Virus record (IMG/VR): IMGVR_UViG_3300037258_000590
Span: 62,001 to 126,000 of that record
Strand: one strand, 5' to 3'
Length of the DNA stretch: 64,000 nt
Numbering within the stretch: the stretch's first letter is position 1; each line of letters starts with the position of its first letter. The position numbers were made by a program, and so were the translations under genes. The notes beneath the pieces are model-generated. The model had not been told where the DNA came from. It was given only the letters and a program-made list of their open reading frames with translations, and ran no database searches. This document shows, piece by piece, positions 12,354 through 47,819 of this stretch.

Positions 12354-12355
12354 TC

Positions 12356-13207: not shown

Positions 13208-13211
13208 CTGA

Positions 13212-13284: not shown

Positions 13285-13322
13285 CAATTCCAGGGCGCTC
13301 ACGCTATGATCGTGGTTCCGTA

Positions 13323-13844: not shown

Positions 13845-13897
13845 TATCCGTGACGCCCGCTCCTCCTGCCAGCACAGCAAGCGAGAGGAGCATTTTC

Positions 13898-26196: not shown

Positions 26197-26525
26197 GCCA
26201 CCGCGGCCCTCGCCTGTTCCAGTTCTTCGATGTTGCTGCCGTTGACGGGAAGTGCCCAGATCCGGTCGTCTGCGTACCGGGGATGTTCCGGCGGCAATGT
26301 CTTCAGCCGGAAATGGCCCAGCCGCCGGATGTCCTCCCATTTCTCGATCCACCGGCCGCCTCGCGACCGGGCCAGCACCCGGACACGCCCAGGCAGGTTC
26401 CCGCCGAGCTGAGGGATGACATACGCCCTGGCCCCCGCGGCCACTGCACTGACCGAGACAACGTAATTGCAGGCGATCACCTGACGGTCCGCGCTCCGGC
26501 CGGCTGGTTCCTGGTTCGCGATCAT
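26193..26525 (-). CDS. Hypothetical protein
   Basis: 4-nt overlaps on both sides. Confidence 0.5.
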   Translation of the reverse strand: MIANQEPAGRSADRQVIACNYVVSVSAVAAGARAYVIPQLGGNLPGRVRVLARSRGGRWIEKWEDIRRLGHFRLKTLPPEHPRYADDRIWALPVNGSNIEELEQARAAVA

Positions 26526-27070
26526 GTCAGGATCGGCACGTCCAGCCTGATCGTGTCCCGCTCGTACTCCGTGGCGGCCCGCGGCCCGCGGGTGAGCACC
26601 AGGACAATGCAGTCGGTGACGGCCTTCCAGGCGTGCGGGATGCCAGCCGGCTCGCGGATGAAATCGCAGGCCTGGGCGTCCCGGGTGTGCACGCCGTCAT
26701 CTTCAAGCCAGGCGACCTGCAGCTGCCCGGATACGACGTAGGTCCACTGCGTGGTCAGCTTGTGGACGTGATTGCCGCGCACGGCGCCGGCCCGGGTGAT
26801 GATCTCGGTGACCGCATCAGCGTGCCCGAGCAGGTCCTGGATGCGCCCTCGCTCGTCGGTGAACTGGCCAAGCTCCAGCTGCGCGGTACCGCCAGGTGCG
26901 GTAGCAGCCTCGGCGAGGATGGCCCGCCTGAGCGATTCCAGCTGGGCGGTCGCCAGCTGGCCGTCACCGAGGATGTCGCCGTAGGTGCCTGCGATGACGT
27001 CCCAGACAGCCATGCCAGCCGCCCGTCCGGCCTTTTCCAGGGCGTCGTCGTCGGGATAGCGGTCAGCCAT
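26522..27070 (-). CDS. Cupin, WxcM/FdtA-like NDP-sugar isomerase
   Basis: DERG, RGNHVH...QWTYVVSG, PAGIPHAW. Confidence 0.7.
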   Translation of the reverse strand: MADRYPDDDALEKAGRAAGMAVWDVIAGTYGDILGDGQLATAQLESLRRAILAEAATAPGGTAQLELGQFTDERGRIQDLLGHADAVTEIITRAGAVRGNHVHKLTTQWTYVVSGQLQVAWLEDDGVHTRDAQACDFIREPAGIPHAWKAVTDCIVLVLTRGPRAATEYERDTIRLDVPILT

Positions 27071-27356
27071 CGTGCGGGTCCTCTCGTCCGGCGCGCCAGT
27101 GCCAGGTGCCGCCCGGATAGTCCCGGCCGCCGCACAGGTCCTGGCGCAGTTCTCCTGGGTTCAGTGACCGGCCCTCGTGTCCCGGGCCGGCGGCAAAGGC
27201 GTCCCGTCGTAAGGCCAGTACCAGGCGATGGTGCACAGGCCGTTGATGATGCCTGCCGGCAGGCCGGGCGGCATCCAGGCCTGCGGACCCGGGGTCAGGG
27301 TTACCCGCCCGCCGCGCGGCTGCGCGATCGGGTCCAGGGCGATCCGGAGCGGGATA

Positions 27357-28487
27357 TCAGCCATGCCACAGCCTGGCATGCGGGAGCGGGACGATGAACT
27401 GGCCTTCGTACCCGGCGGCGCGCAGCTTGGGCGCGATGTCGCCGGCGATGTGCCAGGCGAGCAGCAGCGCGTACGGCGGCTGGGCCTGCATCAGCTCGGC
27501 CTCGTCCACGATGGGTACGGCGGTGCCGGGCAGCATGGTGCCGATCTTGTCTGAGCCGGCCACCTCGGCGATCTTGCTCAGGCAGGAGGCGATACCCGCC
27601 CAGTGCACGAGCGGGGTGGCCCGGGTGGACGCGCTGATCCCCCAGACCGGGCCGGCCCCGGCGGCCTTCTCCATCAGCTGGAGCAGGTACCTGCGGGCGG
27701 TGTCGGCACGGGGCTGCAGGTGCCCGCTGTCCAGCCAGGCGGCCCAGGTGCGGAACGAGCCGCCGTGAACCGGGACGTGCTCGACCCGTTCCGGGACCAG
27801 GCCGTGCATGGCCAGCGCGGCGAGCAGCGTGCCGGGGGTGTAGAACCGCAGGTGCTCGTGGTACACGGTGTCGACCTGCAGGCCGTTCACGACCGAGGCC
27901 CAGTCGTGATTCTCGGTGATGAACGTGCCGCCCTCATCGAGCAGGCTGGTGACCCCGGCGAGGAAATCATGCTGGTCGCCGGCGTGAGCGAGTACATTGC
28001 ACGCGACGATCACCCGGGCCTTGCCGAGCCAGCGGGCGATGTCCCGGGCCAGGGCGGCGGACCAGAAGGACTGCTGGACCGGGATGGCCTTGCGGCGCGC
28101 CCTGGCCGCCTGGCCGGTCGGTTCCACGGCCAGCAGCCGGGCCCCGGGCGCGTGGTGCCGGACCGCTTCCAGCAGCGTCCCGTCATTAGCGCCGATGTCG
28201 ACCACCAGGTCTCCCGGCTTCAGCCCGGCGGCGATGTCCGCGGCCAGCGCGCCGAAATGGCGGCGCATCGCGGCGGAGTTCCCGGTGGTGTACGGGTGAT
28301 TTTCCGGGAACACCTGCTCCCGGTCCGGGGCGTAGGTCAGCTGGGCCAGGCCGCACCGGGCGCATTCGGCGACGGCCAGCGGGTAGCGGTGCCCGTCGTC
28401 CCGCTCGGCCAGCGGCTGCTCTCCCATGTCCAGCACCACGTCCAGCCGCGGGTCTCCGCAGGTTCCGCAGCTCGTGACCTCACCCAC
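27357..28487 (-). CDS. NDP-hexose C-methyltransferase-like protein
   Basis: N-terminal CGTC...CARC Zn site, VVDIGANDG, YHEHLRFY, HGGS, C-terminal LLLAW..FIVPLP. Confidence 0.8.
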   Translation of the reverse strand: MGEVTSCGTCGDPRLDVVLDMGEQPLAERDDGHRYPLAVAECARCGLAQLTYAPDREQVFPENHPYTTGNSAAMRRHFGALAADIAAGLKPGDLVVDIGANDGTLLEAVRHHAPGARLLAVEPTGQAARARRKAIPVQQSFWSAALARDIARWLGKARVIVACNVLAHAGDQHDFLAGVTSLLDEGGTFITENHDWASVVNGLQVDTVYHEHLRFYTPGTLLAALAMHGLVPERVEHVPVHGGSFRTWAAWLDSGHLQPRADTARRYLLQLMEKAAGAGPVWGISASTRATPLVHWAGIASCLSKIAEVAGSDKIGTMLPGTAVPIVDEAELMQAQPPYALLLAWHIAGDIAPKLRAAGYEGQFIVPLPHARLWHG

Positions 28488-28716
28488 GGGCGGCCTCCGC
28501 GGGCGGCTTGACCCAGGGGAACCGGGCGGTGACGTCGCTGCCGGGTTCTTCGGTGATGGCGTCCCAGCCGCCCGGCGCGAACACGGCCACCGGGTCAGCA
28601 GAGCCGGCCGGGTACAGGTGCAGGTAACCGCCCGCCTGCAGGAACCTGTTCGCGAGCACGACGGCCGTGCCGCCAGCCTGGTTCCGGGTGAGCCAGGCCC
28701 GCAGGCGGTCAGCCAT
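28480..28716 (-). CDS. Hypothetical protein
   Basis: Overlaps both neighbours. Confidence 0.4.
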   Translation of the reverse strand: MADRLRAWLTRNQAGGTAVVLANRFLQAGGYLHLYPAGSADPVAVFAPGGWDAITEEPGSDVTARFPWVKPPAEAARG

Positions 28717-29665
28717 GGGCCTGGTACCAGGAGACCGTCTGGCTGAGCCCGTACTCGAACGGGGTGACGGTGAGCGCGGCGCCCGCCAGGTCGTAGATCT
28801 TGGCCAGGTCAGGCAGGCGCCGGGGCGGTGAGCCCTTGGGCAGGCTGCCGGGCAGCAGCTTGATCTCGCGGCCGTAGCACTCCGCGACCGCGTGCGCGAC
28901 CCCGGCGATAGTCATCTCGTTCGCGGTACCGACGTTGTAGATGCCGGTGATCGCGCGGTCCAGCAGCAGGGCCAGCTGGCTGGTGCAGTCGCCGACCCAG
29001 CAGAACGAGCGGGTCTCCTGCCCCGTGCCCTGAACCGGGAACGTGATGACGCCGCTGGCGGCCTCGGCGGTCAGGTCGTTCATCCGGATGCAGAATTCCG
29101 GGATGACGTGCTCGCGGCCCATGTCGGGACCGTAGATGTTGTGCGGCCGGGCGATCACCGCCCGGTCCAGGACCCCGGCGCGTTCCCAGGCCAGGGCGGC
29201 CAGCTCGCAGGCGATCTTGCCGCCGCCGTAGCTGTACCGCATGTTGAGCGGGTCCGGGACGGTCAGCGGGACGGTCTCCGGGGTCGGCACCGTGGCGGCG
29301 ACCTGGTAGGCCTCGCTGGAGGACACCAGGAGAAGGTCGCCGCACCCGGTCGCCTGGCAGGCGTCCAGCACGGAGAGCATCCCGCGCAGGGCCACGTCGA
29401 GCACGGCCCGCGGCTCGGCGTAGAACGTCTGGGTGCCCTGGAGGTAGGCCAGGTGGGCCACGGCGTCGCAGCCGTGCATGGCGTCACGCACGGCATCAGC
29501 GTCGCGGATGTCGCCGGGAATGACCTCGATCCCGGAGCCGTCCAGGCGGGAGCGCTTGCCCCGGCTCATGTCATCGAAGACCCGCACCTCATGACCCGCG
29601 GCGGCCAGCTTGCGGGACAGGGCGCTGCCGATGAAGCCGGCGCCGCCGGTCACCATTATCTTCAT
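28709..29665 (-). CDS. NAD-dependent sugar epimerase/dehydratase
   Basis: TGGAGFIG, VSSSEAY, YGGGK, RPHNIYGP. Confidence 0.88.
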   Translation of the reverse strand: MKIMVTGGAGFIGSALSRKLAAAGHEVRVFDDMSRGKRSRLDGSGIEVIPGDIRDADAVRDAMHGCDAVAHLAYLQGTQTFYAEPRAVLDVALRGMLSVLDACQATGCGDLLLVSSSEAYQVAATVPTPETVPLTVPDPLNMRYSYGGGKIACELAALAWERAGVLDRAVIARPHNIYGPDMGREHVIPEFCIRMNDLTAEAASGVITFPVQGTGQETRSFCWVGDCTSQLALLLDRAITGIYNVGTANEMTIAGVAHAVAECYGREIKLLPGSLPKGSPPRRLPDLAKIYDLAGAALTVTPFEYGLSQTVSWYQAHG

Positions 29666-30676: not shown

Positions 30677-30879
30677 TCACGCCTCCTCGCTCATACGTTC
30701 GGTAACAATACGGGTAACCAGTTCCAGGTTGTCCGCGATAAGCCGCAGCAATTCCGGGTTGTCCTTCGCATGACCGCCGATGATGCTGCAGTCCGGACAA
30801 AGCGAGCCCACGACGGCATACCGGGCAAGATCTCCCTGACGGCATACCGGGCAAGATCTCCCTGACGGGCAGTGCCCAT
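30677..30879 (-). pseudogene. Endonuclease VII-like remnant frameshifted by a 26-bp tandem duplication
   Basis: Removing one copy of 30812-30837/30838-30863 gives MGTARQGDLARYAVVGSLCPDCSIIGGHAKDNPELLRLIADNL... Confidence 0.4.
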
Positions 30880-31251: not shown

Positions 31252-31815
31252 TCAGCCCGCTACCGCCCGGCCGCCGCGCAGCACCCGGCCGCCGCCCGGC
31301 TGGAACCGGCCTGACCCGGCCGCAGGCTCGTTGCCCTTGATCCCGGGCAGCTGCGGGCCGCCGGAAGCGTAACCGTCATCGTTGGCTGCGGTCCAGTCCG
31401 CGGACCCGGACACCGAGTCGCGCACGGTGTCCTGGGCGTAGCTGCCGGAGCCGAACGAGCCGGGGCGGGTGAAAGTGACCGCATCGGGCCCGGTGCCGCC
31501 GCTGGGAGTGGTGCCCTGGGTGCCGGGCGCTCCGGTGCCGTTGATGTCGGCGGGCGCCAGGCCGGTGAGGCCGTCGACCGTCTGGCCGGCTTCCACGGTG
31601 TCGTCATCGCCAGCTCCGCCGCCGCCTGCGGTGCCGGGTGCCCCGGTGCCCTGCGGGAGCTGGCCGCCGAAGATCATGCCGCCCCAGCCGCCGGGCGGGT
31701 ACTGGCCGGCCTCGTTGGTCGGGTCGGCGGGCCCCTGGTCGTTCCCGGAGATCTTCGGGCCGCCGGAGATGCGCTTGGTGCTGTCGTAGCCGGGGACCTG
31801 AGTGCTGCTGGTCAC
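31252..31815 (-). CDS. Gly/Pro/Thr-rich hypothetical protein
   Basis: 187-aa ORF, GGAG RBS. Confidence 0.55.
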   Translation of the reverse strand: MTSSTQVPGYDSTKRISGGPKISGNDQGPADPTNEAGQYPPGGWGGMIFGGQLPQGTGAPGTAGGGGAGDDDTVEAGQTVDGLTGLAPADINGTGAPGTQGTTPSGGTGPDAVTFTRPGSFGSGSYAQDTVRDSVSGSADWTAANDDGYASGGPQLPGIKGNEPAAGSGRFQPGGGRVLRGGRAVAG

Positions 31816-32009
31816 AGGGGGCTCCTCATCATCTGGAGCCCGGCTCCCCGGAGGCCGCGGGCGACTGGTCAGTCAGCTACCAGGATAGCCCCTTCCGGCG
31901 GTTTTCCTCAGTTGCGGGCGGCGCGCCCTCAGCGGACGCCGTAGCCAGGAGGGCCGGATGCCGGCGGCTCCCTGGCCAGCTGGCACACCTCCTCGCTCAT
32001 CTTCTGGCG

Positions 32010-33497
32010 GTCGCATCCCGCACCCAGCTCAGGGCCTGCTGCCAATTGCGGCCTAAGCCCGGACCGGAAGCGGGAATGAATGAGGCCGTCGCACCCCCGC
32101 ACCCAGCTCAGGGCCTGCTGCCAGGCGCGTACCTGTGGCCGTGGTCGCACCTCATGCCCAGCTCAGGCCCTGCTGCCAGACCCGTTCGGGCTCGGCTACT
32201 TCGTCGGGGGTCGCACCTCATACCCAGCTCAGGCTCCGTTGCCAGGCTGTGCAGCTCACTGTCGCACCTCATACCCAGCTCAGGCTCCGTTGCCAGTGAC
32301 GGCGTGCCCGCGCGGCGGTCATCTGGGCAACCCCGTCGCACCTCATACCCAGCTCAGGCTCCGTTGCCAGCCTCCCACTGGAAGGCGCGCCTACGGCTAC
32401 AATGCAGTCGCACCTAATGCCCAGCTCAGGCTCCGTTGCCAGGCCAGGCGGATACTTCTGCGCAAGGTTCCAGCATGTCTGGGGGTCGCACCTCATACCC
32501 AGCTCAGGCTCCGTTGCCAGTCGCAACCAGTCGGCAGCGGTATACCTGCCGTTCTGCAGTCGCACCGCATGCTCAGCTCAGGCTCCGTTGCCAGCAGAAG
32601 ACGACCCGAATCTTAAGGTTGCGCTCCTGGTCGCACCTCATGCCCAGCTCAGGCTCCGTTGCCAGCTCCGGACGCCCAGGCCTTAATCCCAGGCGTCCGG
32701 AGCGTCGCACCTCATGCCCAGCTCAGGCTCCGTTGCCAGCCCGGGTCATGTCCCACCTCATGCCCAGCTCAGGCTCCGTTGCCAGCCTCAGCACCCTTGA
32801 GCGCATCGCGGCGGATCCGCCGTCGCACCTCATGCCCAGCTCAGGCTCCGTTGCCAGCCGCCCCGGCCAGTCCCACGTCGCCTTGGCGTCGCATCTCATG
32901 CCCAGCTCAGGCTCGGTTGCCAGACGTATTTCTTCCCGCCTAGGGCGACTGCTCGCAGCAGTCGCACCTCATGCCCAGCTCAGGCTCCGTTGCCAGGATC
33001 TCGACCATCTCGCCGGCGAGCACGCGACTCGTGTCGCACCTCATGCCCAGCTCAGGCTCCGTTGCCAGCCCCCGGCCGGACTTTGGCGAGGCTAAGCAGT
33101 CGCACCTCATGCCCAGCTCAGGCTCCGTTGCCAGGACCAGGGCATTTTCGCATGCCCGGGGGAGACACTAGTCGCACCTCATGCCCAGCTCAGGCCCCGT
33201 TGCCAGTGTGGCGCCTGTAGGTTGCCTGACATGGAGATGCGCGTCGCACCTCATGCCCAGCTCAGGCTCCGTTGCCAGCGAAGGCCAGCGCGTGACCGTG
33301 CTGACCACGGAGGTAGTCGCACCTCATGCCCAGCTCAGGCTCCGTTGCCAGCCGGACCCGTGGCCCCCCGCCATCCCGCCGGCGCCGGTCGCACCTCATG
33401 CCCAGCTCAGGCTCCGTTGCCAGCGGCGATATCGCGGACCTGGCTGATTTCAGGCTGACCAGTCGCACCTCATGCCCAGCTCAGGCTCCGTTGCCAG
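32010..33497 (-). CRISPR. CRISPR array, 22 repeats (36 nt) and 21 spacers
   Basis: Consensus (minus) CTGGCAACGGAGCCTGAGCTGGGCATGAGGTGCGAC; unique spacers mostly 30-42 nt, three of 10, 15 and 19 nt; degenerate repeats at the left (trailer) end. Confidence 0.98.
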
Positions 33498-35133
33498 GGC
33501 TCCGCTTTCGCGTCTGCCGCGACCTGCGGCGTTCCGGCGGCTTGCGAGCACCTACCCGGCCATAGGCTCCCGGGATAAGGTTCTCAGTCAGCCCGGCGTA
33601 ACCCCTCTCCTGACCTGGGTGCGAGCGCTCCCCGGAGGGAGACTCCGCGCCTGGGTGCTCGCCTGGCGATGTCACTATTGAGTTGGGTAGCGAGTTGACG
33701 GGCTGCTGGCTGACGCCGAGGCATGTCTCCCGTCCTGCCACGGCCTGCGCTGCCGCGGTATACCGATCCAGTATATTCCGGGCCGCGACCACATCGGCAT
33801 GGCCTTCGAGCCCGCAGCGCACGCACCGGAACGTGTCCCGGTCCGGGCGGTTTGCCGCGTCGACATGCCCGCAGCGCGGGCATGTCTGCGAGGTGTACGC
33901 GGCCGGGACGGCAGCCACCTGCGTCTTGTACGCGGTGAACTGCATCACCTGATACCAGTTCCTGGCCAGGATCGCGCGGTTGAGCCCGGCTTTAGCCCGG
34001 ACCTGCGAGCCTGGCTGTTCCGCCGTGCCCCTGGCTGAGCTGGTCATCGCGGACACGTCAAGATCTTCCATGACCACCATCGCGTACCGGTCGGCAAGAG
34101 CGCGAGAAGCCAGGTGCGCTCCCGCAGTGCGCTGGCGGACCTGGCGCTGGCTGAGCTTGAGGTACGCCAGCTTGTCCCGGGCGTACCGGGCCGAATGCTT
34201 CCAGCAGCCGCAATCGTGGGCGGGATGACCCGGCGGTGGGCAGTAATGCCGGATCAGCTTGCTCCGGCCGCGCACGGTAACCCACACGTCGTGCCGGCAC
34301 GGGTTCAGGCGGCGCTTGCGGCTCAGGGTACGCTGCAGCCGGTCCTTGCGCTGCTGCTGTCCCGCAGACAAGACGGGCGTGTGATAAGCAGCCCCGTCTG
34401 CGGTGGCGATAGTGACGGCTACGCCGCGGTCGACCCCGGTAATGCCGCCAGCCGCGGGTTGCCGTACCTGGGCGGTGTCGTACTGCAGCAGCACCCAGTA
34501 ACGGCCCAGCGCATCAGCGCGCAGCACCGCGAACCTGACCAGGGTGTCGGCGGGCAGTTCCCGGTGATACCGGATACGGATCACGCCGATGACACCCGGC
34601 ACGCGGAATTCGGCGGTTGCCGGGCGGCTCCCGGTCGCTTTCCCGGTCACGATCACGGTCTTGCCCAGCGGACGCGGGCCGTTCTCGCCCTTCACCTGCC
34701 AGTACAGCGAACCGCCCCGGTGCACCGAACGAAAACGCGGCGGGCTGGACGGGCACCGCTGGCCGGGTGCGTGCGGATTCCGGTTCCACCCGGCCAGCGC
34801 TTTGAGATGCCTGGTCCAGGACCCGGACAGCTGCCGCAAAGCGCCGTACAGGAAAACCGCCGGCACGTCCGCGATCAGCCGCAAGCCGCCCTGGTACGGG
34901 AACTCCACGCCAGCCTGACGGGCAGCCGTTACCGCGTAGGAAAGCCGCTGCTTGTACGTCTCTACCGGAACATGATGCCGGTACCGGTCGAGCTGTGACG
35001 CGGCAGCCTCGTTGTAGAACCAGGTGACGCCGGCGTGGCAGAACCTGAACGCGGTTTCCTGCTCCGCGGTAAGCATGGCGGCGTAGGCCTGAGCGCGGAT
35101 ATGCCGGCCAGCATCTTTGCCAGGCGGGGTCAC
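33481..35133 (-). CDS. Compact type V CRISPR effector, TnpB-derived (Cas12n/C2c9-like)
   Basis: RuvC-I GVDRGV, RuvC-II VMEDL, CPRC/CVRC Zn finger, RuvC-III ADVVAARNI; stop codon inside first repeat; no tnpA or cas1/2; subtype is inference. Confidence 0.8.
   Translation of the reverse strand: MTPPGKDAGRHIRAQAYAAMLTAEQETAFRFCHAGVTWFYNEAAASQLDRYRHHVPVETYKQRLSYAVTAARQAGVEFPYQGGLRLIADVPAVFLYGALRQLSGSWTRHLKALAGWNRNPHAPGQRCPSSPPRFRSVHRGGSLYWQVKGENGPRPLGKTVIVTGKATGSRPATAEFRVPGVIGVIRIRYHRELPADTLVRFAVLRADALGRYWVLLQYDTAQVRQPAAGGITGVDRGVAVTIATADGAAYHTPVLSAGQQQRKDRLQRTLSRKRRLNPCRHDVWVTVRGRSKLIRHYCPPPGHPAHDCGCWKHSARYARDKLAYLKLSQRQVRQRTAGAHLASRALADRYAMVVMEDLDVSAMTSSARGTAEQPGSQVRAKAGLNRAILARNWYQVMQFTAYKTQVAAVPAAYTSQTCPRCGHVDAANRPDRDTFRCVRCGLEGHADVVAARNILDRYTAAAQAVAGRETCLGVSQQPVNSLPNSIVTSPGEHPGAESPSGERSHPGQERGYAGLTENLIPGAYGRVGARKPPERRRSRQTRKRSPGNGA
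33609..33625 (-). ncRNA. Candidate anti-repeat (tracrRNA/omegaRNA-like) inside effector 3' CDS
   Basis: Minus-strand CUCGCACCCAGGUCAGG can pair with repeat blocks UGCGA, CUGGG and CCUGA. Confidence 0.5.
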
Positions 35134-35354
35134 CGGCCCGCACCTGCTGCCAGGCAGCGCTCTACCTCCGCCAGGCTGGCACCTGTCTGCTCATCGCCGG
35201 CCAGCAGCCTGCCCTCCGCGTTGCGCAGGTACCAGCGCCCGTAGCCGAGCGCGCGAGGGTCACGCCGCCGGAGCTTAGCCAGGCGCAGCCCCTGCCGGGC
35301 GGCAGCGCGCCGGGAACGGTTCTCCCGGGTCATCAGCGTGTAGTCGCGAGTCAC
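35130..35354 (-). CDS. Small basic protein translationally coupled to the Cas12-like gene
   Basis: GTGA overlap at 35130-35133; Arg-rich. Confidence 0.5.
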   Translation of the reverse strand: MTRDYTLMTRENRSRRAAARQGLRLAKLRRRDPRALGYGRWYLRNAEGRLLAGDEQTGASLAEVERCLAAGAGR

Positions 35355-35383
35355 GCCAGCTGTAACGACAGCTGTAGCGGGAG

Positions 35384-35698
35384 TTATTCCCTTGCGTCTC
35401 CTGCGCGCATCCCGGCGGGCGGGTTCGCGTGCGGCGCCAGCTTCGCCATTTCCGTGGTCATCTGCTGCCGGATCTCCTGCTCCGCGAGATGCGGCGTACC
35501 ACCGTAGATCATGGCGCGGATAATGCGGAGCCGCCGGGCAGCGTCCACGGCTTCCGCTTCAAGCACGTCTTCCAGGTGCTCGCACCACTGGCGCAGCAGC
35601 GTGACCTGGATCTGCAGGACGGCATCAGCCGGAGCTGACAGGCCGAGCCGGCGCAGGTACTGCTCAAGGATGTCCCTGGTCGCGCTCACCGCCGGCAC
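35384..35698 (-). CDS. Hypothetical protein
   Basis: 104 aa, contains PHANPPAGMR near the C-terminus. Confidence 0.5.
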   Translation of the reverse strand: MPAVSATRDILEQYLRRLGLSAPADAVLQIQVTLLRQWCEHLEDVLEAEAVDAARRLRIIRAMIYGGTPHLAEQEIRQQMTTEMAKLAPHANPPAGMRAGDARE

Positions 35699-35751
35699 CG
35701 CCCTCCTGCTGTCAGGCTAGCGCATCCCGGCGGGCAGGTTCGCGTGCGGCG
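35405..35751. repeat. 32-bp direct repeat pair (1 mismatch)
   Basis: gcgcatcccggcgggc(g/a)ggttcgcgtgcggcg at 35405-35436 and 35720-35751. Confidence 0.85.
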
Positions 35752-35950
35752 AGCACCTGATGCACTGCAGGTTCGAGCTGTCGGCAGAGTCGGTGATGAC
35801 CAGGGTGCCGGGCATCGCCATGTGCCCGCAGGGCAGCCGCTTGAGCAGGACCCCGCCGTCACGGCAGGCCATGCAGACGTGCCGCGTGTCGGCCAGCACG
35901 ATCCGGTCCGCTGACGGCGGGATAGGCCGCCCGCAGGAGCCGCACGGCAT
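35717..35950 (-). CDS. Cys-rich Zn-binding hypothetical protein
   Basis: CGSC, CMAC, LPCGH, CIRC. Confidence 0.55.
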   Translation of the reverse strand: MPCGSCGRPIPPSADRIVLADTRHVCMACRDGGVLLKRLPCGHMAMPGTLVITDSADSSNLQCIRCSPHANLPAGMR

Positions 35951-36000
35951 ACGGCTGGCGCGGCCCCGGGCGACGGCGATACGGGAGCGGCGGCTGTTGC

Positions 36001-36600
36001 TCAGAGCCGGCCGCCGTACCGGCTCATCAGGTCCGCCTTGGTCATCGCGGCGGCCTTGTCCTGATCGGCGCCCTGGCTGACCGCCCAGTCGATCCAGGCG
36101 GCCTTGGGAGCGGCGGGACCCGGCGCGACAGGCGCTGGCGTCACGGCATCCGGCTCGCCGGGTTCCTGCACCTGGTCGTCGTCCCCGGCGCCTGCCTCGG
36201 CCCCGTCGTCCCCGGCGCCTGCCTCGGCCCCGTCGTCCCCGGCGTCGAGGTAGCCGGGCGGCTCCGGCACATCGCCCGGCACCGCATCCGCGGCCAGGGC
36301 TTCGGCGGCCAGCCGCTCGCCCTCAACCTGGCTGGCCGGGCGGCCGTCGAGCTTGGACGGGTGGCCCGGCCGCGGGCCTTCGAAGTCGTCCCGCAGCATG
36401 TCCCAGAGCGCTTCCGCGTCCTTGCCGTACGGCGCGGCCAGCTCGGCCCGGATCAGGTCCGCGCCTTCAGCGTCAGGCACGTCCAGTGTCGCGTCCACGG
36501 GCGGCCACCGCTCGCCGTTGCGATGCCCGGAGATCCCGATCCGCATCCGTACCAGCATGGCTGTTCCCTCCGGGATAGCACCTTGCTCCTGTAATGGCAT
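36001..36600 (-). CDS. Phage protein downstream of capsid gene
   Basis: Acidic linker with 27-bp tandem repeat; C-terminal KAAWIDWAVSQG..MTKADL; start uncertain. Confidence 0.6.
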   Translation of the reverse strand: MPLQEQGAIPEGTAMLVRMRIGISGHRNGERWPPVDATLDVPDAEGADLIRAELAAPYGKDAEALWDMLRDDFEGPRPGHPSKLDGRPASQVEGERLAAEALAADAVPGDVPEPPGYLDAGDDGAEAGAGDDGAEAGAGDDDQVQEPGEPDAVTPAPVAPGPAAPKAAWIDWAVSQGADQDKAAAMTKADLMSRYGGRL

Positions 36601-36662
36601 CCCAGCCGGTGCTCGCGTTACAGGCCGCCAGCACCGGCCAGGATGTGCCCGCGAGGTGCCGG

Positions 36663-37928
36663 TCAGGTACCGGCCCCGACGAACACCTTGATCGCCCCGG
36701 TACGGTCCACCAGCGTGCCGTCGCCGCGCAGGATCGCACGGAACGTCACGAGATCGCTGCCGAAAGCGAAGTCGTCGGAGCGCTCAAACCGCACCCCGCC
36801 GACCAGGCGGACGAAGTACTGGGAGAAGTCTCCGAAAGCGACCGACTTGGCCGACGTGGCCTGAGCCGGCATGAACGGGTCCGCCACCAGGGGCTTGCCG
36901 AGCAGCAGGTCAGGGGACCCGAGGACAGCGCTGGGCTCCCAGATCGGGCGCCCCACGGTGTCGGTGATCTTCCGGAAGCCCCCGATGGTCTTGTCCGCGG
37001 CCAGCCAGTAGCAGGATCGCGACTGGCGGTAGGGGGCAATCACGGAATATTCCAGGTCGACCAGGTTGGCGTAGGACGGTGCCCCGGAGACGCCGGTCAC
37101 GGCCCCGGTCACGCCGGTCGTGGCGACGGTGACGATGCCCGCGGGCTGGCCGCTGCCGGATCCGTTCACCAGGTCGGATCCGAACGAGTTTCCGAGAGCC
37201 CGCCCGGCTTGCATAGCAAGATACCCGAGAAGGTCTACCGCCGTGTCGTCAATCAGCTCCCGTGCTACTTGGAGCATAATTCCGTATTTGTACGCTGACA
37301 AGGGTTGCATCGAGAATGCAGGGTCAGCGGTGGGCAGGTTTCCGGCCTGCGCCGCGGAGGCCGCAGTCGAATGTGCTGTCGTCTTGGGCACCTGCAGCGT
37401 CTCGCCGCCACCGGTGTTGAGGACGGTCGGACCGCACTGCATCACACCCGAGACCTCGATCAAGTGTGCGATAAGCATGTCGTAGAAGTCGGTCGGTACG
37501 ATACTGCTTGCGTTTGTGCCGCTTGACTGGCCGCCCGTGGTCAGGATCCGGTAGTTGATCGGGCCGAGGCTGTTGTCGCGGCGGATCTCCAGGTTCCGGG
37601 GCGCGCCTTCCTCCCCGCGGGCCCACTTGCGGATCTCCTCCAGCATCGCGCCGCCGCCAGCGGTCCGGGCTGCCTGGCCGCCTTCGGGCTTGCGGCCGGA
37701 CAGCGCGTCGAACGCGTCATCGGCCTCCTTGGCGCGCTTCTCGGTATCGAGCACGGCGCGGATGCGGGTGTCCAGCTTGGACATCTCCTCCTGCATCGCG
37801 TCCCACTTGCCCTGTTCCTCATCGGTCAGGGCGCGGTTCTCGGTAGCAGCCGCCTCAGCGATGCCCTTAGCCTCATTCCAGACGTTCTGCCTCCGGTCAC
37901 GAAGCCTTTTTGCGACCTCACTAGCCAC
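36663..37928 (-). CDS. Major capsid protein, HK97 fold
   Basis: N-terminal coiled-coil scaffold, YKYG...VARELIDD, LVNGSGSGQPAGI, LLGKPLV, VAFGDFSQY, VTFRAILRGDG. Confidence 0.93.
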   Translation of the reverse strand: MASEVAKRLRDRRQNVWNEAKGIAEAAATENRALTDEEQGKWDAMQEEMSKLDTRIRAVLDTEKRAKEADDAFDALSGRKPEGGQAARTAGGGAMLEEIRKWARGEEGAPRNLEIRRDNSLGPINYRILTTGGQSSGTNASSIVPTDFYDMLIAHLIEVSGVMQCGPTVLNTGGGETLQVPKTTAHSTAASAAQAGNLPTADPAFSMQPLSAYKYGIMLQVARELIDDTAVDLLGYLAMQAGRALGNSFGSDLVNGSGSGQPAGIVTVATTGVTGAVTGVSGAPSYANLVDLEYSVIAPYRQSRSCYWLAADKTIGGFRKITDTVGRPIWEPSAVLGSPDLLLGKPLVADPFMPAQATSAKSVAFGDFSQYFVRLVGGVRFERSDDFAFGSDLVTFRAILRGDGTLVDRTGAIKVFVGAGT

Positions 37929-42533: not shown

Positions 42534-42571
42534 CTGCGTAACAGGTGCAGGAGCGAAGACAGGAGACCATC

Positions 42572-43435
42572 ATGAGCAGAACCAAAGCTGAGACGTACGT
42601 GCTGGACTGGCGGGTGAGCGCCCGGCTGAAGCAGCTGCGCCTCGCCGCCGGCATGACGGGTACCGATGTAGCGGCCAAGGCCGGGATATCGTCATCCAAG
42701 GTCGCCCGGATAGAACTGGGCAGGAATGCCTTTCCGCTCTCCGACCTGCGCGTACTGCTCAAGCTCTACGGGCTGGAGGAGCACGGCGACGAGACGCAGC
42801 ACATCGTGGACCTGGCGGCCAGTTCCGCGGAACCGCACCTCGGCGTCAAAGGTTCCCCGCGGACTTCGGCGTCCGGAGTCCTGCGCGAGACCTGCACCGA
42901 GATCAGGCTCTGGGCGCCGGAGGTGCTGCCGCCGCCGCTGCGCACGGAAGCCTACGAACGCGCGCTTGCCACGGCAGTGCAGGACCTGACCGGCCAGCTG
43001 CCATCTGAGGTGGCGAGAGCCGCGAAGACAGCGGCAGCCTGGTCGGACCGGGTGAGCGCCCGCAGAGGCGCGCTCCCGGTGCGCGCGGTCATCGACGCGA
43101 CGACCCTGCGGCGTACGGTGGGATCTGCGGCGATCATGCGCGATCAGGTCAGTTACCTGGTCATGCTGACCCAGGAGCCCGGAATTACGCTGCTGGTGCT
43201 GCCCCTTGGCGCGCTAGCCCCCCGCGGGACCAGCGCCTTCACGTGGATGCGGTTCAGCGACGTGCAGGGCACGCGGACGCCGGATGCCGTGATCTTTGAT
43301 GACATCACGGCCCCGGAATTCAGGATCACGAACGAGGAGCAGGTGACGTACAGGTGTGCCCGCACGTTCGGGATGCTGGAGAACGCGGCCGAGAACCCGG
43401 CTGCCGCCTTGGCCGCGGCGGGGAAAGCCTGGTGA
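42572..43435 (+). CDS. XRE HTH + DUF5753-like actinobacterial regulator
   Basis: RLKQLRLAAGMT..DVA..AGIS.SKVARIELG; LRTEAY, AVIDATTLRRTVG..MRDQ. Confidence 0.8.
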   Translation: MSRTKAETYVLDWRVSARLKQLRLAAGMTGTDVAAKAGISSSKVARIELGRNAFPLSDLRVLLKLYGLEEHGDETQHIVDLAASSAEPHLGVKGSPRTSASGVLRETCTEIRLWAPEVLPPPLRTEAYERALATAVQDLTGQLPSEVARAAKTAAAWSDRVSARRGALPVRAVIDATTLRRTVGSAAIMRDQVSYLVMLTQEPGITLLVLPLGALAPRGTSAFTWMRFSDVQGTRTPDAVIFDDITAPEFRITNEEQVTYRCARTFGMLENAAENPAAALAAAGKAW

Positions 43436-45011: not shown

Positions 45012-47819
45012 TCACCGGACAGACCTTCCCGGATCGTAGTGGCGGCGGCGCTTGTTCAGTGCCCACAAGGCGAGCGTGGCTGCGGTGACCGGCGTGATGT
45101 CGGATTCGCTGTCGCGCCGGGACCAGGCTTTGCCGCCGTCGCCGACGACGCGGGTCTCGGCCCTGGCCACCGCGTGCCACATGCCAGGGGCGTTTTCCTG
45201 GCCGAAGTGGATCAGGCGCTTCCCGGGAACGGTGCTGCGGACGCTGGCGACAATGAAAGCGAACGCGGCTGCTTCGTCCGCGCTGGATGCGGTCAGGACC
45301 TCGATGCCGGCTTTGACCGCATCATCGATCAGGCCGGCGGCAGGCCCGTTCTTCGGCATCGCGATGACAATCGGCCGCCAGGCCTTGCGCAGCTCGGTCA
45401 GCCGTGGGATGACCCAGGAGACGCCCTCGCGGTGGCAGCCTTGCGGGATCTCCGCAACCGGCCGCTCGGGCTCGGCCAGGGCGAGACGCACGGCCAGCGC
45501 CTCCGGCGTGCCAGCGCGGGCGGCCATCATGGCGGCGATCTCGGTCTCGATCCCGGCGCGGGAGGGCCCGGGTACGGCAGGCCGGTACCAGGCAGCGGCG
45601 ATCGACGCGCTGAGCATGTCGGGGTCGACATCCACAGCGAACGCGATAGGCCGTGTCGTGCCGCCGGGATCGGCGATGGTGCAGGCTTCCCACTGCTCGC
45701 GGGAGATCACCGACCAGGCTTCGTCTTCGGTGGGCCAGTCGCCGACGCCGAGCCGTTCCCGGTCGAAGGCCTGGGCGCTCATCGCCTCCATTTCCTTGGC
45801 GACATGCTGGACGGAAATCCGGGTGCCGAGCGCGGGATTGGCCTTGGCCCAGGACCGCGGGTCATCCCGGTCGTCATGCAGGGCGCAGGTGACGTAGTGG
45901 TTGGTGACCCGGCCGCGCAGCTCATCTCGCGGGCAGCTGTCCAGGTGCGGGCTGACCGACCATTCAGCGCCCATCAGGCTGGCGTCATTGCGGAGCACCC
46001 GGCGCCGTACCGAGCCGAGCTGGACGGAATCCTTATAGCCGGCGGAGGCGGTGTAGATCATCTGCGGATTAGGGACGGCGCTCATGGTCGGCATCGACGC
46101 GCCGACCTGATCGTCGCTGAGGATCATAGCTTCGTCGTAGATCACCGCGTCGGCGGTGAATGACCGGCCGGAACCACGAGAGCGGGCCAGGAACCGGAGC
46201 CGCGGGGTGATCGAGCGGCGGATCATCGCGCCCGTCGAGCCGAAGATCAAGGTGGGGACCGAGCGCAGTTCGATGGCCTCGTCGCCATGGGACGTGGTGA
46301 TCGACTTGACCCGCTTGCGCAGCTCGTCGTAGGCGGTGATGGTGTCGCGGACCCGGCGGAAGTGCTCAGCGGCGGCCTTGAATTCGTGCGCGGTATGGAT
46401 CAGCATTTTCTCGCCGAACACGAACAGGCCGCCGAGTTCCCGGACTTCGAGGCAGTTGTGCGTCGGAGTGAACGTGTGCCCGAGCAGGAACACGCCGTCT
46501 TTCGCGACGACGGTAATGCACCGGACCGGCACCGAGGGCACCGGCCGGACATCAGTGATGCTCATCAGCTCATGCCGCCGGGATACGGGGAACCGCCAGC
46601 GCTCGGCCTTGCGAGGGAGAGCGAACGGGTTAAACGAGGGCGTCCACAAGAACCTGGCCTGATCCCGGTGCGGCTGGCCATTCAGTGACACAGGGCGATC
46701 CCGGCGCGCTACCCGGATACCGAGACTCCGGGCCAGCCGGTGGAATCCCTCCGCGATCCGGGGATTCGACGCCGTGAACTCCGCCTGGGGCGATTTGTTC
46801 GTGATGGCGATAGAGCCATCTGAGTCCATCAGCCCGCGCAGCAGCGCCAGCCGCTGAACCGGGGAGGCCGTCAGGTAGATCTCCGGGATGTGCTTATCGC
46901 CCCAGACGCCTAGGCGCCGGCAGCGTGACTCGAATCCGTCGCGCATGCGGCCGAGGGTGATGCGAACATCCCATACGCCGCGCAAGGCCTGCTCCCGGGC
47001 ACTGGCCTTTGCTCCAGCTGCGCTCACGAGTGCCTGAACCCATTCCAGGTCTGCCTTGCCGCACGTAATGACAGGACCTTTCGCGTACCCGTCGCCCAGC
47101 CAGTATCCGAGCAGGTACGGGTCAACTGGCAAGGCAGCCTCGGGTGTATCGGGCACCGCGTCGCACCGCACCCGGTAACGGTAGGCCTTCCGGCCCGTAT
47201 CCCGCGGGGGGAAGGCGAAGTCGCCGGCGATTCTTCCCGTAGTGAGATCCTGCCACCGGCCCCTGGTGTCCCTGACGTGCCAGAGGTGATCTTCATCAGC
47301 GGTATACACCGACCCGTCAGTAAACGTCACGGCGTAACACGGCCGGTCCCGGAAAACGCCGGTTACCGCCGTGACCCGCGTCGGCTGGCCGTCCGATCCG
47401 TACACGAAATCTCCGGGGAGCAGAGCACCTATTGCCTGCCAGCCCCGGTTTACTGTCAGTACCGGTGTAATGACAGAAATCGCCTGATTTTTCCCGTTCT
47501 GGCGGCTGACGATGAGCATGCACTCGAATGCGGCCCATTTGCCGTCCGGCTGGGTACCGCAGGCCTCGGTCAGCCACCATTGCTGCCACGGGTCCAGGTC
47601 GTAGCCGAAACCGGCACCCCAGTCCAGCAGGTCGCTGCTCTGGTAATCCCCGCACCCGCAGGCGTAATCGCGGTTGTCACAGGAAACGCAGGCCGGGTTC
47701 TTCTCCCGGTGCCTCGGCGGCGCGGTCCAGAATCTCGGCTCCTGGCTGCCGGTGAGCCCGCGCAGGACCTGGCCGCCAGGCAGGATAAAGTCCGGCACGA
47801 CCCGCAGCGTGACAGGCAT
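45012..47819 (-). CDS. terL: Terminase large subunit with intein
   Basis: DPWQ, Walker A SRQNGK, HTAH, GRSFTAD.VIYDEAM, ANPALG, FDRERLG, FAVDVDPD, SDITPV.A. Confidence 0.93.
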   Translation of the reverse strand: MPVTLRVVPDFILPGGQVLRGLTGSQEPRFWTAPPRHREKNPACVSCDNRDYACGCGDYQSSDLLDWGAGFGYDLDPWQQWWLTEACGTQPDGKWAAFECMLIVSRQNGKNQAISVITPVLTVNRGWQAIGALLPGDFVYGSDGQPTRVTAVTGVFRDRPCYAVTFTDGSVYTADEDHLWHVRDTRGRWQDLTTGRIAGDFAFPPRDTGRKAYRYRVRCDAVPDTPEAALPVDPYLLGYWLGDGYAKGPVITCGKADLEWVQALVSAAGAKASAREQALRGVWDVRITLGRMRDGFESRCRRLGVWGDKHIPEIYLTASPVQRLALLRGLMDSDGSIAITNKSPQAEFTASNPRIAEGFHRLARSLGIRVARRDRPVSLNGQPHRDQARFLWTPSFNPFALPRKAERWRFPVSRRHELMSITDVRPVPSVPVRCITVVAKDGVFLLGHTFTPTHNCLEVRELGGLFVFGEKMLIHTAHEFKAAAEHFRRVRDTITAYDELRKRVKSITTSHGDEAIELRSVPTLIFGSTGAMIRRSITPRLRFLARSRGSGRSFTADAVIYDEAMILSDDQVGASMPTMSAVPNPQMIYTASAGYKDSVQLGSVRRRVLRNDASLMGAEWSVSPHLDSCPRDELRGRVTNHYVTCALHDDRDDPRSWAKANPALGTRISVQHVAKEMEAMSAQAFDRERLGVGDWPTEDEAWSVISREQWEACTIADPGGTTRPIAFAVDVDPDMLSASIAAAWYRPAVPGPSRAGIETEIAAMMAARAGTPEALAVRLALAEPERPVAEIPQGCHREGVSWVIPRLTELRKAWRPIVIAMPKNGPAAGLIDDAVKAGIEVLTASSADEAAAFAFIVASVRSTVPGKRLIHFGQENAPGMWHAVARAETRVVGDGGKAWSRRDSESDITPVTAATLALWALNKRRRHYDPGRSVR
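46455..47483 (-). mobile_element. Class 3 intein with LAGLIDADG endonuclease in TerL (343 aa)
   Basis: Starts with Ala (AISV); block B DEDHLW, block F VRCITV, block G PTHN, Cys+1; LLGYWLGDG and LLRGLMDSDG. Confidence 0.88.

What the first reader, a model, noticed from the sequence alone, without database searches (positions are those of the whole stretch)
33481..33760. Anti-repeat hidden in the effector's own 3' coding tail
Seen: after RuvC-III the ORF continues about 90 low-complexity residues. On the minus strand, 33625-33609 reads CUCGCACCCAGGUCAGG, which can pair with repeat blocks UGCGA, CUGGG and CCUGA with a 7-nt repeat bulge. A related motif GCACCCAGG lies at about 33650-33660. Known: the TnpB omegaRNA overlaps the 3' end of tnpB. 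Inference: a tracrRNA-like scaffold is encoded inside the CDS and may be contiguous with repeat 1 as a natural single guide.
Basis: partly seen in the sequence, partly recalled or inferred. Interest (0 to 1): 0.78.

Follow-up and report, generated by a model that had tools for sequence, protein, structure and literature searches.

The report
Guide-RNA scaffold inside phage nuclease gene
The last ~300 bases of a small phage-borne CRISPR nuclease gene also encode the folded guide-RNA scaffold, which runs straight into the CRISPR array; this arrangement is already known for Cas12n and TnpB, and the 17-base 'anti-repeat' that was flagged is probably not the element that pairs with the repeat.

Summary
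The sequence facts are correct. The 550-aa TnpB/Cas12-like ORF (35133->33481, minus strand) carries a ~90-residue disordered tail. CUCGCACCCAGGUCAGG sits at 33625-33609, and the ORF's stop codon lies inside repeat 1 of a co-directional array of more than 20 repeats.

The flagged complementarity is at chance level for this GC-rich DNA: 216 of 469 equal-sized chunks of the window match a perfect anti-repeat as well.

Twenty related loci show that the tail is a structured RNA. Two stems have 12 of 23 pairs with compensatory changes, and substitutions in the tail are nearly even across codon positions.

The element that changes together with each lineage's own repeat is a different box. Box A (33696-33662) lies just after stem 2 (permutation test, 0 of 20000).

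So the idea of a tracr/omegaRNA-like scaffold inside the CDS, contiguous with repeat 1, is supported. The specific anti-repeat is doubtful.

The arrangement is published for Cas12n (type V-N) and TnpB, and RdCas12n is this family's best solved-structure sequence match. The locus lies in a 210-kb actinophage contig. I found no RNA data.

Verdict: a new member of a known kind, of moderate interest.

The parts
33481..35133 (-). Effector ORF, 550 aa, a TnpB/Cas12n-like RNA-guided nuclease. RuvC residues D235, E356 and D447 and the zinc-finger cysteines C418, C421, C437 and C440 are invariant across the family.
   Evidence: searches (Pfam Cas12f1-like_TNB, 5.9e-17; NCBIfam guided_TnpB, 139 bits against a cutoff of 100), 11, and 48 (best PDB sequence match RdCas12n 9J09, E 1e-25).
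33775..33804 (-). Codons for GHADVVAARN, which contain the RuvC-III aspartate D447. This marks the end of the folded protein core.
33462..33758 (-). Dual-use tail. It codes for residues ~459-550, predicted to be disordered, and also forms the whole proposed guide-RNA scaffold through the last base of repeat 1.
   Evidence: pLDDT ~30. (ratio of third-position to first/second-position substitutions is 1.39 in the tail against 2.46 in the core; GC3 is 0.71 against 0.82)..
33738..33758 (-). Stem 1, a 7-bp hairpin (CCGCGGC...GCCGUGG).
   Evidence: alignment columns 35-55, with compensatory changes at 4 of 7 pairs..
33697..33734 (-). Stem 2, a long irregular hairpin.
   Evidence: columns 59-102, with compensatory changes at 8 of 12 pairs..
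33662..33696 (-). Box A, the family-wide anti-repeat that covaries with the repeat. Its 5' half, CUCGCUACCCAACU (33694-33681), faces repeat positions -22 to -6. Its 3' end, GCCAG, can pair with the repeat's 5' CUGGC.
   Evidence: cognate -14.09 against permuted -9.22 +/- 0.93 kcal/mol, 0 of 20000 permutations as low. In this window the pairing itself is weak (4+4+2 bp, -9.3 kcal/mol).
33650..33663 (-). It is the predicted 5' arm of a local hairpin with box B.
   Evidence: the GCGAGCGC:GCGCUCGC helix is kept in 8-12 of 13 sequences, with no covariation. In this window the helix has one A.C mismatch.
33609..33625 (-). It is a conserved scaffold element. It could be the partner of the invariant repeat 3' end GCGAC (pseudoknot-like) or the 3' arm of the B'/B hairpin. 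It is complementary to the repeat only in this clade.
33555..33574 (-). Hairpin D. In this window it is CCCGG...CCGGG; in relatives it is UCCC...GGGG. It codes for the conserved LIPxxWG peptide.
   Evidence: the inner pairs are invariant, and the flanking helix shows compensatory pairs..
33540..33549 (-). Box C (GCUCGCAAGC), the third CUCGC box. It is conserved even in relatives that lack box B.
   Evidence: no repeat-specific complementarity.
33498..33530 (-). Two small hairpins, GCCGC-AGGUC-GCGGC at 33530-33516 and CGC-GAAA-GCG at 33512-33503, followed by the conserved GGAGCC that abuts repeat 1.
33462..33497 (-). Repeat 1, identical to the array consensus. It contains the ORF's stop codon UGA at 33483-33481.
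   Evidence: the stop falls inside repeat 1 in WIN, L037, L038, L050, L116, L118, L119, L120 and L044; an independent contig spans 33468-35200.
32003..33497 (-). CRISPR array of 20 regular 36-nt repeats plus 2-3 degenerate ones at the far end (32003-32128). Spacers are mostly 30-38 nt. The array reads in the same direction as the effector.
   Evidence: repeat degeneracy at the distal end sets the polarity; the array differs between samples.

Best explanation
The locus is a phage-borne miniature type V system of the Cas12n/TnpB kind. Its guide-RNA scaffold is written into the last ~300 nt of the nuclease gene, on the coding strand (33758->33462), and runs without a break into repeat 1 of a co-directional array.

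Shown: the tail is a conserved structured RNA, namely stems 1 and 2, box A, an optional B'/B module, hairpin D, box C and two small hairpins. As protein it is disordered and only weakly constrained. Box A, directly 3' of stem 2, is complementary to positions about -22 to -6 of each lineage's own repeat and changes together with it. The last 5-7 nt of the repeat (GCGAC) are invariant.

Inferred: the effector transcript, or a read-through transcript into the array, is processed as for the TnpB omegaRNA and the Cas12n tracrRNA. The first unit (scaffold, repeat 1, spacer 1) can act as a natural single guide in cis. Later repeat-spacer units are served in trans by the same scaffold through box A.

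The most likely roles are an arm of a local hairpin or the pseudoknot partner of the invariant GCGAC end. Only in this clade does it also resemble an anti-repeat, probably because boxes A and B are similar here (16 of 20 nt).
For: - Effector identity.
- Disordered tail.
- RNA constraint on the tail: 12 of 23 predicted pairs have compensatory changes in stems 1 and 2; 6 of 21 in the downstream module; codon-position ratio 1.39 in the tail against 2.46 in the core.
- Box A covaries with the repeat, with perfect or near-perfect helices at the same anchored position and different sequences: CCCUCACCC/GGGUGAGGG (L049), UAGGCACCAU/AUGGUGCCUA (L123), CACGCCA/UGGCGUG (L125), CUCGCAGCCC/GGGCGCGAG (L118). 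Permutation over 10 lineages gave 0 of 20000. The cognate repeat beat every non-cognate repeat in 9 loci.
- Contiguity: the same distance from scaffold to repeat 1 in 20 loci, and the stop codon inside repeat 1.
- Solo relatives with one repeat-like end.
- L129 lacks stems 1-2 and box A, and its repeat carries an internal palindrome instead.
[quoted passage not shown] Cas12 tracrRNAs typically form a pseudoknot with the 3' end of the repeat (bioRxiv 10.1101/2025.01.20.633832).
Against: - There is no transcript evidence at all. No RNA run was listed, and no promoter or terminator consensus was found.
- In this window the box A:repeat pairing is weak (-9.3 kcal/mol, 4+4+2 bp) and weaker than box B:repeat (-15.5). 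Neither exceeds chance within the single sequence.
- Box A is poorly complementary to the repeat in the B-less relatives L038, L121 and L040.
- The reading frame stays open through the tail in all loci and some peptide motifs are conserved (LIPxxWG, the basic RKRPERRRSR). Some protein-level role for the tail is therefore not excluded.
- The fold of the region between box A and repeat 1 is only partly resolved, and no pseudoknot could be tested because both candidate strands are invariant.
Confidence: 0.7

Rival explanations
1. One reading: the 17-nt box B (33625-33609) is the functional anti-repeat in this phage. It pairs with CCUGA, CUGGG and UGCGA of the repeat across a 7-nt bulge.
For: - In the clade WIN, L037, L116, L118 and L050, box B and the sequence following it are co-linear with the whole repeat and at least as complementary as box A (WIN -36.3, L037 -39.2 kcal/mol; cognate rank 0-1; WIN B -15.5 against A -9.3).
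- The UCG serine codon inside box B is invariant in nearly all lineages, which suggests a constraint at the RNA level.
- Its distance from the guide (-161 to -164) resembles the pseudoknot strand of RdCas12n at -168 to -170.
Against: - The match is chance-level in the single sequence.
- There is no lineage-specific complementarity outside one clade (5480 of 20000, ranks 6-16 of 16-18 in L119-L125).
- Box B is absent from array-bearing L038 and from L117, L121, L040 and L042.
- It is predicted to be sequestered by box B'.
- Within the clade, changes in the repeat (CUGGG to CCGGG) are not compensated in box B.
Confidence: 0.2
2. A crRNA-only system. The conserved tail RNA structure is not part of the guide. 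It would serve as the array leader or promoter, a transcription or translation regulator, or an mRNA-processing or stability element for the effector.
For: - The tail sits exactly where a CRISPR leader would be.
- The relative L129 has a self-complementary repeat and no box A.
- Cas12m, a neighbouring actinobacterial miniature type V system, uses crRNA only (table in PMC11641405).
Against: - Covariation between box A and the repeat across lineages is not expected for a leader or regulator.
- Solo relatives keep the whole tail with a single repeat-like end.
- The closest characterised relatives (Cas12n, TnpB) use a scaffold derived from the ORF tail.
- The repeats of this window have no strong internal hairpin (-7.6 kcal/mol).
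Confidence: 0.07
3. The tail is conserved only as protein, as a basic, disordered nucleic-acid-binding C-terminal domain. The apparent RNA features are by-products of GC-rich coding sequence.
For: - The frame is open in all loci. The motifs LIPxxWG and RKRPERRRSR are conserved, and residues 512-528 reach pLDDT of about 70.
Against: - Double-sided compensatory changes occur in stems 1 and 2.
- Substitutions are nearly uniform across codon positions and GC3 is reduced.
- The proteins P0008 and P0010 are frame-shifted in the tail while the nucleotide sequence stays alignable.
- Box A covaries with the repeat.
Confidence: 0.03

Closest known systems
Cas12n (type V-N, formerly V-U4/C2c9; AcCas12n, RdCas12n)
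   Same: - It is a 400-700 aa TnpB-like monomeric effector from Actinobacteria.
- It has an unstructured C-terminal tail after RuvC-III that contains the tracrRNA; the reported mean length is 544 aa, or 485 aa without the tail. Here the figures are 550 aa and about 460 aa.
- The array is adjacent, and no cas1 or cas2 was seen among 34 ORFs of the window.
- RdCas12n is the best solved-structure sequence match (E 1e-25, with the shared motif MTxSAKGTxExPGxNVxxKxGLNR).
   Different: - Only the C-terminal ~175 residues align with RdCas12n. AcCas12n could not be compared.
- The published description places the anti-repeat at the 3' end of a 100-200 nt tracrRNA. Here the covarying anti-repeat is followed by ~165 nt of further conserved structured sequence that abuts repeat 1, and the stop codon lies inside repeat 1.
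- The PAM is unknown, and the locus is phage-borne.
TnpB omegaRNA/reRNA (IS200/IS605, IS607)
   Same: - The guide scaffold overlaps the 3' end of the nuclease ORF on the same strand and is followed directly by the guide.
- NCBIfam guided_TnpB scores above its cutoff.
- The top structural matches are ISDra2 and ISFba1 TnpB (TM-score by target 0.74-0.76).
- Some family members carry a single repeat-like end plus unique sequence.
   Different: - This locus has an array of more than 20 repeats instead of one transposon-end guide.
- No TnpA or transposon ends were identified.
- The protein is ~150 aa longer than typical TnpB.
- No Rfam omegaRNA family matches.
Cas12f (type V-F) tracrRNA, with its two repeat:anti-repeat duplexes and pseudoknot
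   Same: The overall logic is the same: a multi-stem scaffold, a duplex with the repeat, and a separate short pairing with the repeat's 3' end. Foldseek ranks 2-6 are AsCas12f.
   Different: - The Cas12f tracrRNA is intergenic, not inside the ORF.
- Cas12f acts as a dimer.
- NCBIfam Cas12f2 scores 38 bits against a cutoff of 450.
TranC (transposon-CRISPR intermediates, e.g. LaTranC) and the 'functional RNA splitting' model
   Same: The family mixes omegaRNA-like solo loci with array-bearing loci. The repeat equals the last 36 nt of the omegaRNA-like scaffold. Both fit a reRNA split into tracrRNA and crRNA.
   Different: - Sequence similarity to LaTranC is weak (E 1e-8).
- The reported TranC C-terminal domains are structured and do not hold the tracrRNA.
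- Clade membership was not tested.
Phage-encoded miniature type V systems (CasPhi/Cas12j, Caslambda, Cas12p 'hacker')
   Same: A compact single-effector CRISPR system with an array, carried by a large phage and lacking adaptation genes.
   Different: - CasPhi and Caslambda use crRNA only.
- Cas12p has a separate 185-nt tracrRNA and needs thioredoxin.
- Sequence matches are marginal (E 1e-9 to 7e-4).

Membership tests
Cas12n (type V-N / V-U4) | Miniature (400-700 aa) TnpB-like effector with an intact RuvC D-E-D triad and a zinc-finger TNB domain | tested here: met
   550 aa. D235, E356, D447 and four cysteines are invariant in 32 sequences. Pfam TNB domain.
Cas12n (type V-N / V-U4) | Unstructured C-terminal tail after the last RuvC catalytic residue | tested here: met
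   AlphaFold2 pLDDT is about 30 for residues 464-511 and 529-550, against about 90 for the core. Whether the tail is dispensable cannot be tested here.
Cas12n (type V-N / V-U4) | tracrRNA encoded within the tail-coding part of the ORF, with an anti-repeat | tested here: met
   Structured RNA with compensatory pairs and an anti-repeat box that covaries with the repeat. The existence of the transcript was not testable.
Cas12n (type V-N / V-U4) | Sequence relatedness to characterised Cas12n proteins | tested here: inconclusive
   RdCas12n (9J09) is the best PDB sequence hit (E 1e-25, against 1e-15 for Cas12f and TnpB), but only over residues ~295-469. The 9J09 model lacks the NUC lobe, so Foldseek ranks it 39th.
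Cas12n (type V-N / V-U4) | 5'-AAN PAM | not testable with these tools
   No protospacers were found in the phage or plasmid collections. Three spacers matched only their own contig in IMG/VR.
TnpB / omegaRNA | Protein matches the RNA-guided TnpB family model | tested here: met
   NCBIfam NF040570 guided_TnpB, 139 bits against a cutoff of 100. Foldseek top hits are 8H1J and 8IAZ.
TnpB / omegaRNA | A single guide defined by the transposon right end, with no CRISPR array, inside an IS element with TnpA or defined ends | tested here: not met
   An array of more than 20 repeats follows the scaffold. No transposase was found among the neighbouring ORFs. The IS200_TnpB and IS607_TnpB exception models score far below their cutoffs.
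Cas12f (type V-F) | Match to Cas12f family models; intergenic tracrRNA | tested here: not met
   NCBIfam Cas12f2 scores 38 bits against a cutoff of 450. There is no intergenic space: the ORF runs into repeat 1.
Cas12m (type V-M / V-U1) | Sequence relatedness; crRNA-only guide | tested here: not met
   PDB Cas12m hits have E of 7e-4 to 3e-6 over the RuvC region only. The anti-repeat evidence argues for a scaffold RNA.
TranC clades | Placement in a published TranC clade | not tested
   Only LaTranC chains were available for comparison (E 1e-8). No clade reference set was at hand.

The most novel reading that the evidence does not exclude
This is a phage-borne family caught between TnpB and CRISPR. 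A complete omegaRNA, written into the nuclease's own coding tail, is fused to repeat 1, so the first unit would be a natural single guide. The same scaffold would serve all later repeats in trans through box A. A duplicated anti-repeat-like box (B) would give an alternative or second docking site in this clade. Close relatives at 45-70% identity span the states 'solo omegaRNA', 'mini-array', 'array of more than 20 spacers' and, in L129, 'self-folding repeat with box A lost'.
Probability: 0.3. Interest if true: 0.6.

Novelty: new member of a known kind. Interest (0 to 1): 0.35.

Why it matters
The principle of a guide scaffold hidden in the nuclease's 3' coding tail is already published for TnpB and Cas12n. 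The finding therefore does not open a new category.

Its value is as a natural comparative series. One family on large actinophages and other mobile elements contains omegaRNA-like solo loci, small arrays, a 20-spacer array and a variant whose repeat folds on itself. The anti-repeat and the repeat visibly co-evolve across these states. That makes the proposed splitting of a transposon RNA into tracrRNA and crRNA testable within a single family.

It would also add a compact nuclease (about 460 aa without the tail) and its scaffold to the miniature-editor repertoire. Finally, it shows that eye-matched complementarity in GC-rich DNA is unreliable without comparative controls.

Tried and rejected
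- RNA evidence: two run searches listed only four soil-metagenome DNA runs and no RNA run.
- DNA contigs laid on the locus confirm the tail-repeat 1 junction and show array polymorphism, but say nothing about transcripts.
- An Rfam scan at a permissive E-value gave no match in 31500-36000.
- The sigma-70 promoter and intrinsic terminator scan found nothing in 31700-36700. This is uninformative for an actinophage.
- Protospacers and PAM: the whole array against the phage and plasmid collections gave only chance-level hits. Three leader-proximal spacers searched in IMG/VR matched only the window's own contig.
- The supplementary Cas12n sequence set of PMC12216341 is not held. Cluster look-ups gave no names.
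- Foldseek could not settle Cas12n membership, because the solved RdCas12n model lacks the nuclease lobe.
- Unrestricted RNAduplex of the whole tail against the repeat is too permissive in this GC-rich RNA and gave several mutually exclusive 'full-length' pairings. I replaced it with anchored segments and cognate versus non-cognate controls.
- Box C and hairpin D showed no repeat-specific complementarity.
- The L002 'array' is a coding pentapeptide-like repeat next to a gene fragment. Distant relatives at 28-36% identity lack arrays and look like ordinary TnpB.
- One script flooded its output because a fuzzy regular expression swallowed spacer ends. Only its repeat list was used.
Full report
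**What is there**

The finding lies at the 3' end of a 550-codon ORF on the minus strand (35133->33481). The protein matches Pfam Cas12f1-like_TNB (5.9e-17) and the NCBIfam RNA-guided TnpB subfamily model (139 bits, cutoff 100).

Directly downstream on the same strand lies a CRISPR array (33497->32003). It has 20 regular 36-nt repeats plus degenerate copies at the far end. That places the leader-proximal end next to the effector and means the array reads in the effector's direction. In crRNA sense the repeat is CUGGCAACGGAGCCUGAGCUGGGCAUGAGGUGCGAC. The ORF has no stop until the UGA inside repeat 1 (33483-33481), so there is no intergenic space at all.

**Checking the observation**

CUCGCACCCAGGUCAGG is at 33625-33609, and GCACCCAGG recurs at 33658-33650. 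The three pairing blocks (UGCGA, CUGGG, CCUGA) with a 7-nt bulge exist.

The match is what chance gives in this ~70% GC DNA.
- In a gapped local alignment against the perfect anti-repeat, the 263-nt tail scores 10.5. Of 469 equal-sized chunks from the rest of the window, both strands, 216 score at least as high.
- By RNAduplex the motif reaches -30 to -31 kcal/mol in a 30-nt window, a value reached by 5.4% of 124,782 windows elsewhere.

The single sequence therefore cannot carry the claim. Comparative evidence is needed.

**The family**

A protein search found about 50 close relatives (43-72% identity, 500-590 aa), almost all from soil metagenomes. After them there is an abrupt drop to ordinary ~390-aa TnpB proteins at E of about 1e-41.

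In the alignment the RuvC residues D235, E356 and D447 and four zinc-finger cysteines are invariant, so the nuclease looks active.

I collected 20 non-redundant loci with the tail and what follows it. Every one has the same layout. The tail leads, at a fixed distance, into a repeat-like unit ending in ...GCGAC.
- Some loci have 2-6 repeats, and the window has more than 20.
- Several loci (L039, L119, L121, L049/L052, L040/41/48) have just one such end followed by unique sequence, like a TnpB omegaRNA with its guide.
- In the window's clade the stop codon is always the UGA inside repeat 1.

**The tail is an RNA**

RNAalifold on the 20-sequence alignment (A2) predicts two stems right after the RuvC-III motif: stem 1 (window 33758-33738) and stem 2 (33734-33697). 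Of 23 predicted pairs, 12 show changes on both sides that keep the pair, for example G-C to A-U in 8 sequences at one pair. The downstream part also has a hairpin with an invariant core and a flanking helix with compensatory pairs.

Substitution patterns change at the core/tail boundary.

| Sequence set | Third-position to first/second-position substitution ratio, core | Same ratio, tail |
|---|---|---|
| Close clade | 2.46 | 1.39 |
| All 16 sequences | 1.87 | 1.16 |

GC3 falls from 0.82 in the core to 0.71 in the tail. The AlphaFold2 model (mean pLDDT 79.9) gives pLDDT of about 30 for residues 464-511 and 529-550. Two relatives (P0008, P0010) are frame-shifted in the tail while the nucleotides remain alignable. 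The tail is therefore mainly constrained as nucleic acid. The frame is kept open, however, and a few peptide motifs persist.

**Which element faces the repeat**

Three boxes in the tail contain CUCGC and could pair with the repeat:
- box A, right after stem 2 (33696-33662);
- box C (33549-33540).

I compared each locus's box with its own repeat and with the repeats of unrelated lineages.

Box A is cognate-specific in most lineages. In 9 loci no foreign repeat pairs as well. The helices sit at the same anchored position but have different sequences: CUCGCAGCCC/GGGCGCGAG (L118), CCCUCACCC/GGGUGAGGG (L049), UAGGCACCAU/AUGGUGCCUA (L123), CACGCCA/UGGCGUG (L125).

I then took 10 independent lineages and anchored segments: 14 nt of the box against repeat positions -22 to -6.

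| Box | Mean cognate energy (kcal/mol) | Permuted pairings (kcal/mol) | Permutations as low |
|---|---|---|---|
| A | -14.09 | -9.22 +/- 0.93 | 0 of 20000 |
| B | -12.10 | -11.73 +/- 0.60 | 5480 of 20000 |

Box C and hairpin D show nothing.

Box B is conserved almost letter for letter (GAGCGCUCGCACSCAGGUCAGGAG) in lineages whose repeats are quite different. It lies in an indel-variable module that is missing from L038 (which still has an array), L117, L121, L040 and L042. That helix is conserved but shows no covariation.

**A caveat for this window**

In the clade WIN, L037, L116, L118 and L050, boxes A and B resemble each other (16 of 20 nt in the window). Box B plus the sequence after it is co-linear with the whole repeat. 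In the window itself box B pairs better (-15.5) than box A (-9.3 kcal/mol). The family-level answer is box A. Use of box B in this phage cannot be excluded without RNA or structural data.

Box B's CUCGCA is also complementary to the invariant repeat end UGCGA(C), and it lies about 161-164 nt upstream of the guide. In RdCas12n, positions -4 to -2 pair with -168 to -170. A Cas12p preprint states that Cas12 tracrRNAs characteristically form a pseudoknot with the repeat's 3' end. This is a lead only: both strands are invariant here, so it could not be tested.

**A natural variant**

L129 comes from a 130-kb viral contig, is 46% identical and has at least 11 repeats. It lacks stems 1-2 and box A but keeps box B, hairpin D and box C. 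Its repeat carries an internal palindrome (UCUCUGAUCAGAGA) not seen in the others. This fits box A being the strand that otherwise pairs with the repeat, although the energies involved are modest.

**Context**

The window is part of IMG/VR contig IMGVR_UViG_3300037258_000590 (210,383 bp). It encodes a large terminase, portal, prohead protease and major capsid protein just upstream of the effector and 39 tRNA genes. It is therefore a large actinophage.

Two relatives are also on viral contigs of 101 kb and 130 kb. Others sit beside integrases, ParA/ParB or WhiB-type genes. The closest genome hit is a Streptosporangiaceae MAG. No Cas1, Cas2 or Cas4 domain appeared among 34 ORFs of the window.

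An independent assembly contig spans 33468-35200, so the tail-repeat junction is not an assembly artefact. Other samples carry array variants.

**Comparison with what is known**

[quoted passage not shown] A third source says the tail is unstructured, dispensable and contains the tracrRNA, with a mean length of 544 aa, or 485 aa without it (bioRxiv 10.64898/2026.03.27.714800). The same is known for the TnpB omegaRNA.

The family profile's best solved-structure sequence match is RdCas12n (E 1e-25, ten orders better than Cas12f or TnpB), but only over the C-terminal ~175 residues. Foldseek puts TnpB and Cas12f first and cannot judge Cas12n, because the solved model lacks the nuclease lobe. I therefore call this a Cas12n-like member of the known kind. 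Strict membership remains open, because the PAM is untestable and AcCas12n was not available.

The locus differs from the published Cas12n description in four ways:
- the covarying anti-repeat is followed by ~165 nt of further conserved, partly structured sequence;
- that sequence abuts repeat 1;
- the stop codon lies inside the repeat;
- the system sits on a phage.

**Mechanism proposed**

Shown:
- a dual-use tail;
- a structured RNA;
- co-evolution of box A with the repeat;
- contiguity with repeat 1;
- an invariant GCGAC end on the repeat;
- an intact catalytic triad.

Inferred:
- the scaffold is released from the effector or array transcript, as for TnpB and Cas12n;
- the first unit can act as a natural single guide;
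- later units are served in trans via box A;
- box B is a structural or pseudoknot element and, in this clade, possibly an alternative docking site.

Nothing is known about transcripts.

**Verdict**

- The principle is already published.
- This is a new, phage-borne member of a known kind, with a useful natural series of states in its family. Interest 0.35.

Noticed in passing
window 5540-13285 (+), then 13835-15577 (+): A cluster of 39 tRNA genes covering nearly all amino acids is followed by a Ro60/TROVE RNA-binding protein gene. A TROVE gene also lies near the relative L124.
   Followed up: no
window 48899-50218 (-): An adenylosuccinate-synthetase homologue whose best PHROG (phrog_1211, 3e-71) is annotated as the PurZ-type enzyme of phages that replace adenine with 2-aminoadenine. 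ThyX (53605-54645), a NADAR domain protein (52858-53478) and a C5 DNA methylase (59249-60112) are nearby. This may point to a modified-base genome.
   Followed up: no
window 45012-47855 (-): The large terminase subunit (947 aa) is interrupted by a LAGLIDADG/Hom_end homing-endonuclease domain at residues ~323-391, which suggests an intein.
   Followed up: no
window 32246-32260 and 32740-32749; 32003-32128: The array is irregular. Two units have very short spacers (15 and 10 nt), and the distal repeats are degenerate.
   Followed up: partly
window 32210-32334 and 33352-33462: In other soil DNA runs, one contig lacks 125 nt (two repeat-spacer units). A 9.8-kb contig carries the same repeat with different sequence between two repeats. 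The array therefore differs between co-occurring strains.
   Followed up: no
L129:5275-6400 (IMGVR_UViG_3300036820_000002): A divergent relative (46% identity) on a 130-kb viral contig. Its tail lacks stems 1-2 and box A but keeps box B, hairpin D and box C. Its AU-richer repeat contains an internal palindrome, and it has at least 11 repeats.
   Followed up: partly
window 42542-43435 (+); L117:1997-2872, L119:1358-2242, L120:6541-7377: An HTH_31 + DUF5753 regulator gene, often with DUF6879, recurs near the effector in the window and in several relatives.
   Followed up: no
window 30812-30863: A perfect tandem duplication of a 26-nt unit lies downstream of the array.
   Followed up: no
window 35405-35436 and 35720-35751: A 32-nt direct repeat (97% identical, 315 nt apart) lies in the small-ORF region just upstream of the effector.
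   Followed up: no
window 20985-21638, 26522-29665 and 3650-4789: A set of sugar-modification genes flanks the array on its distal side: a glycosyltransferase, a cupin, a C-methyltransferase and two nucleotide-sugar epimerases/dehydratases. This is unusual cargo next to a phage structural module.
   Followed up: no
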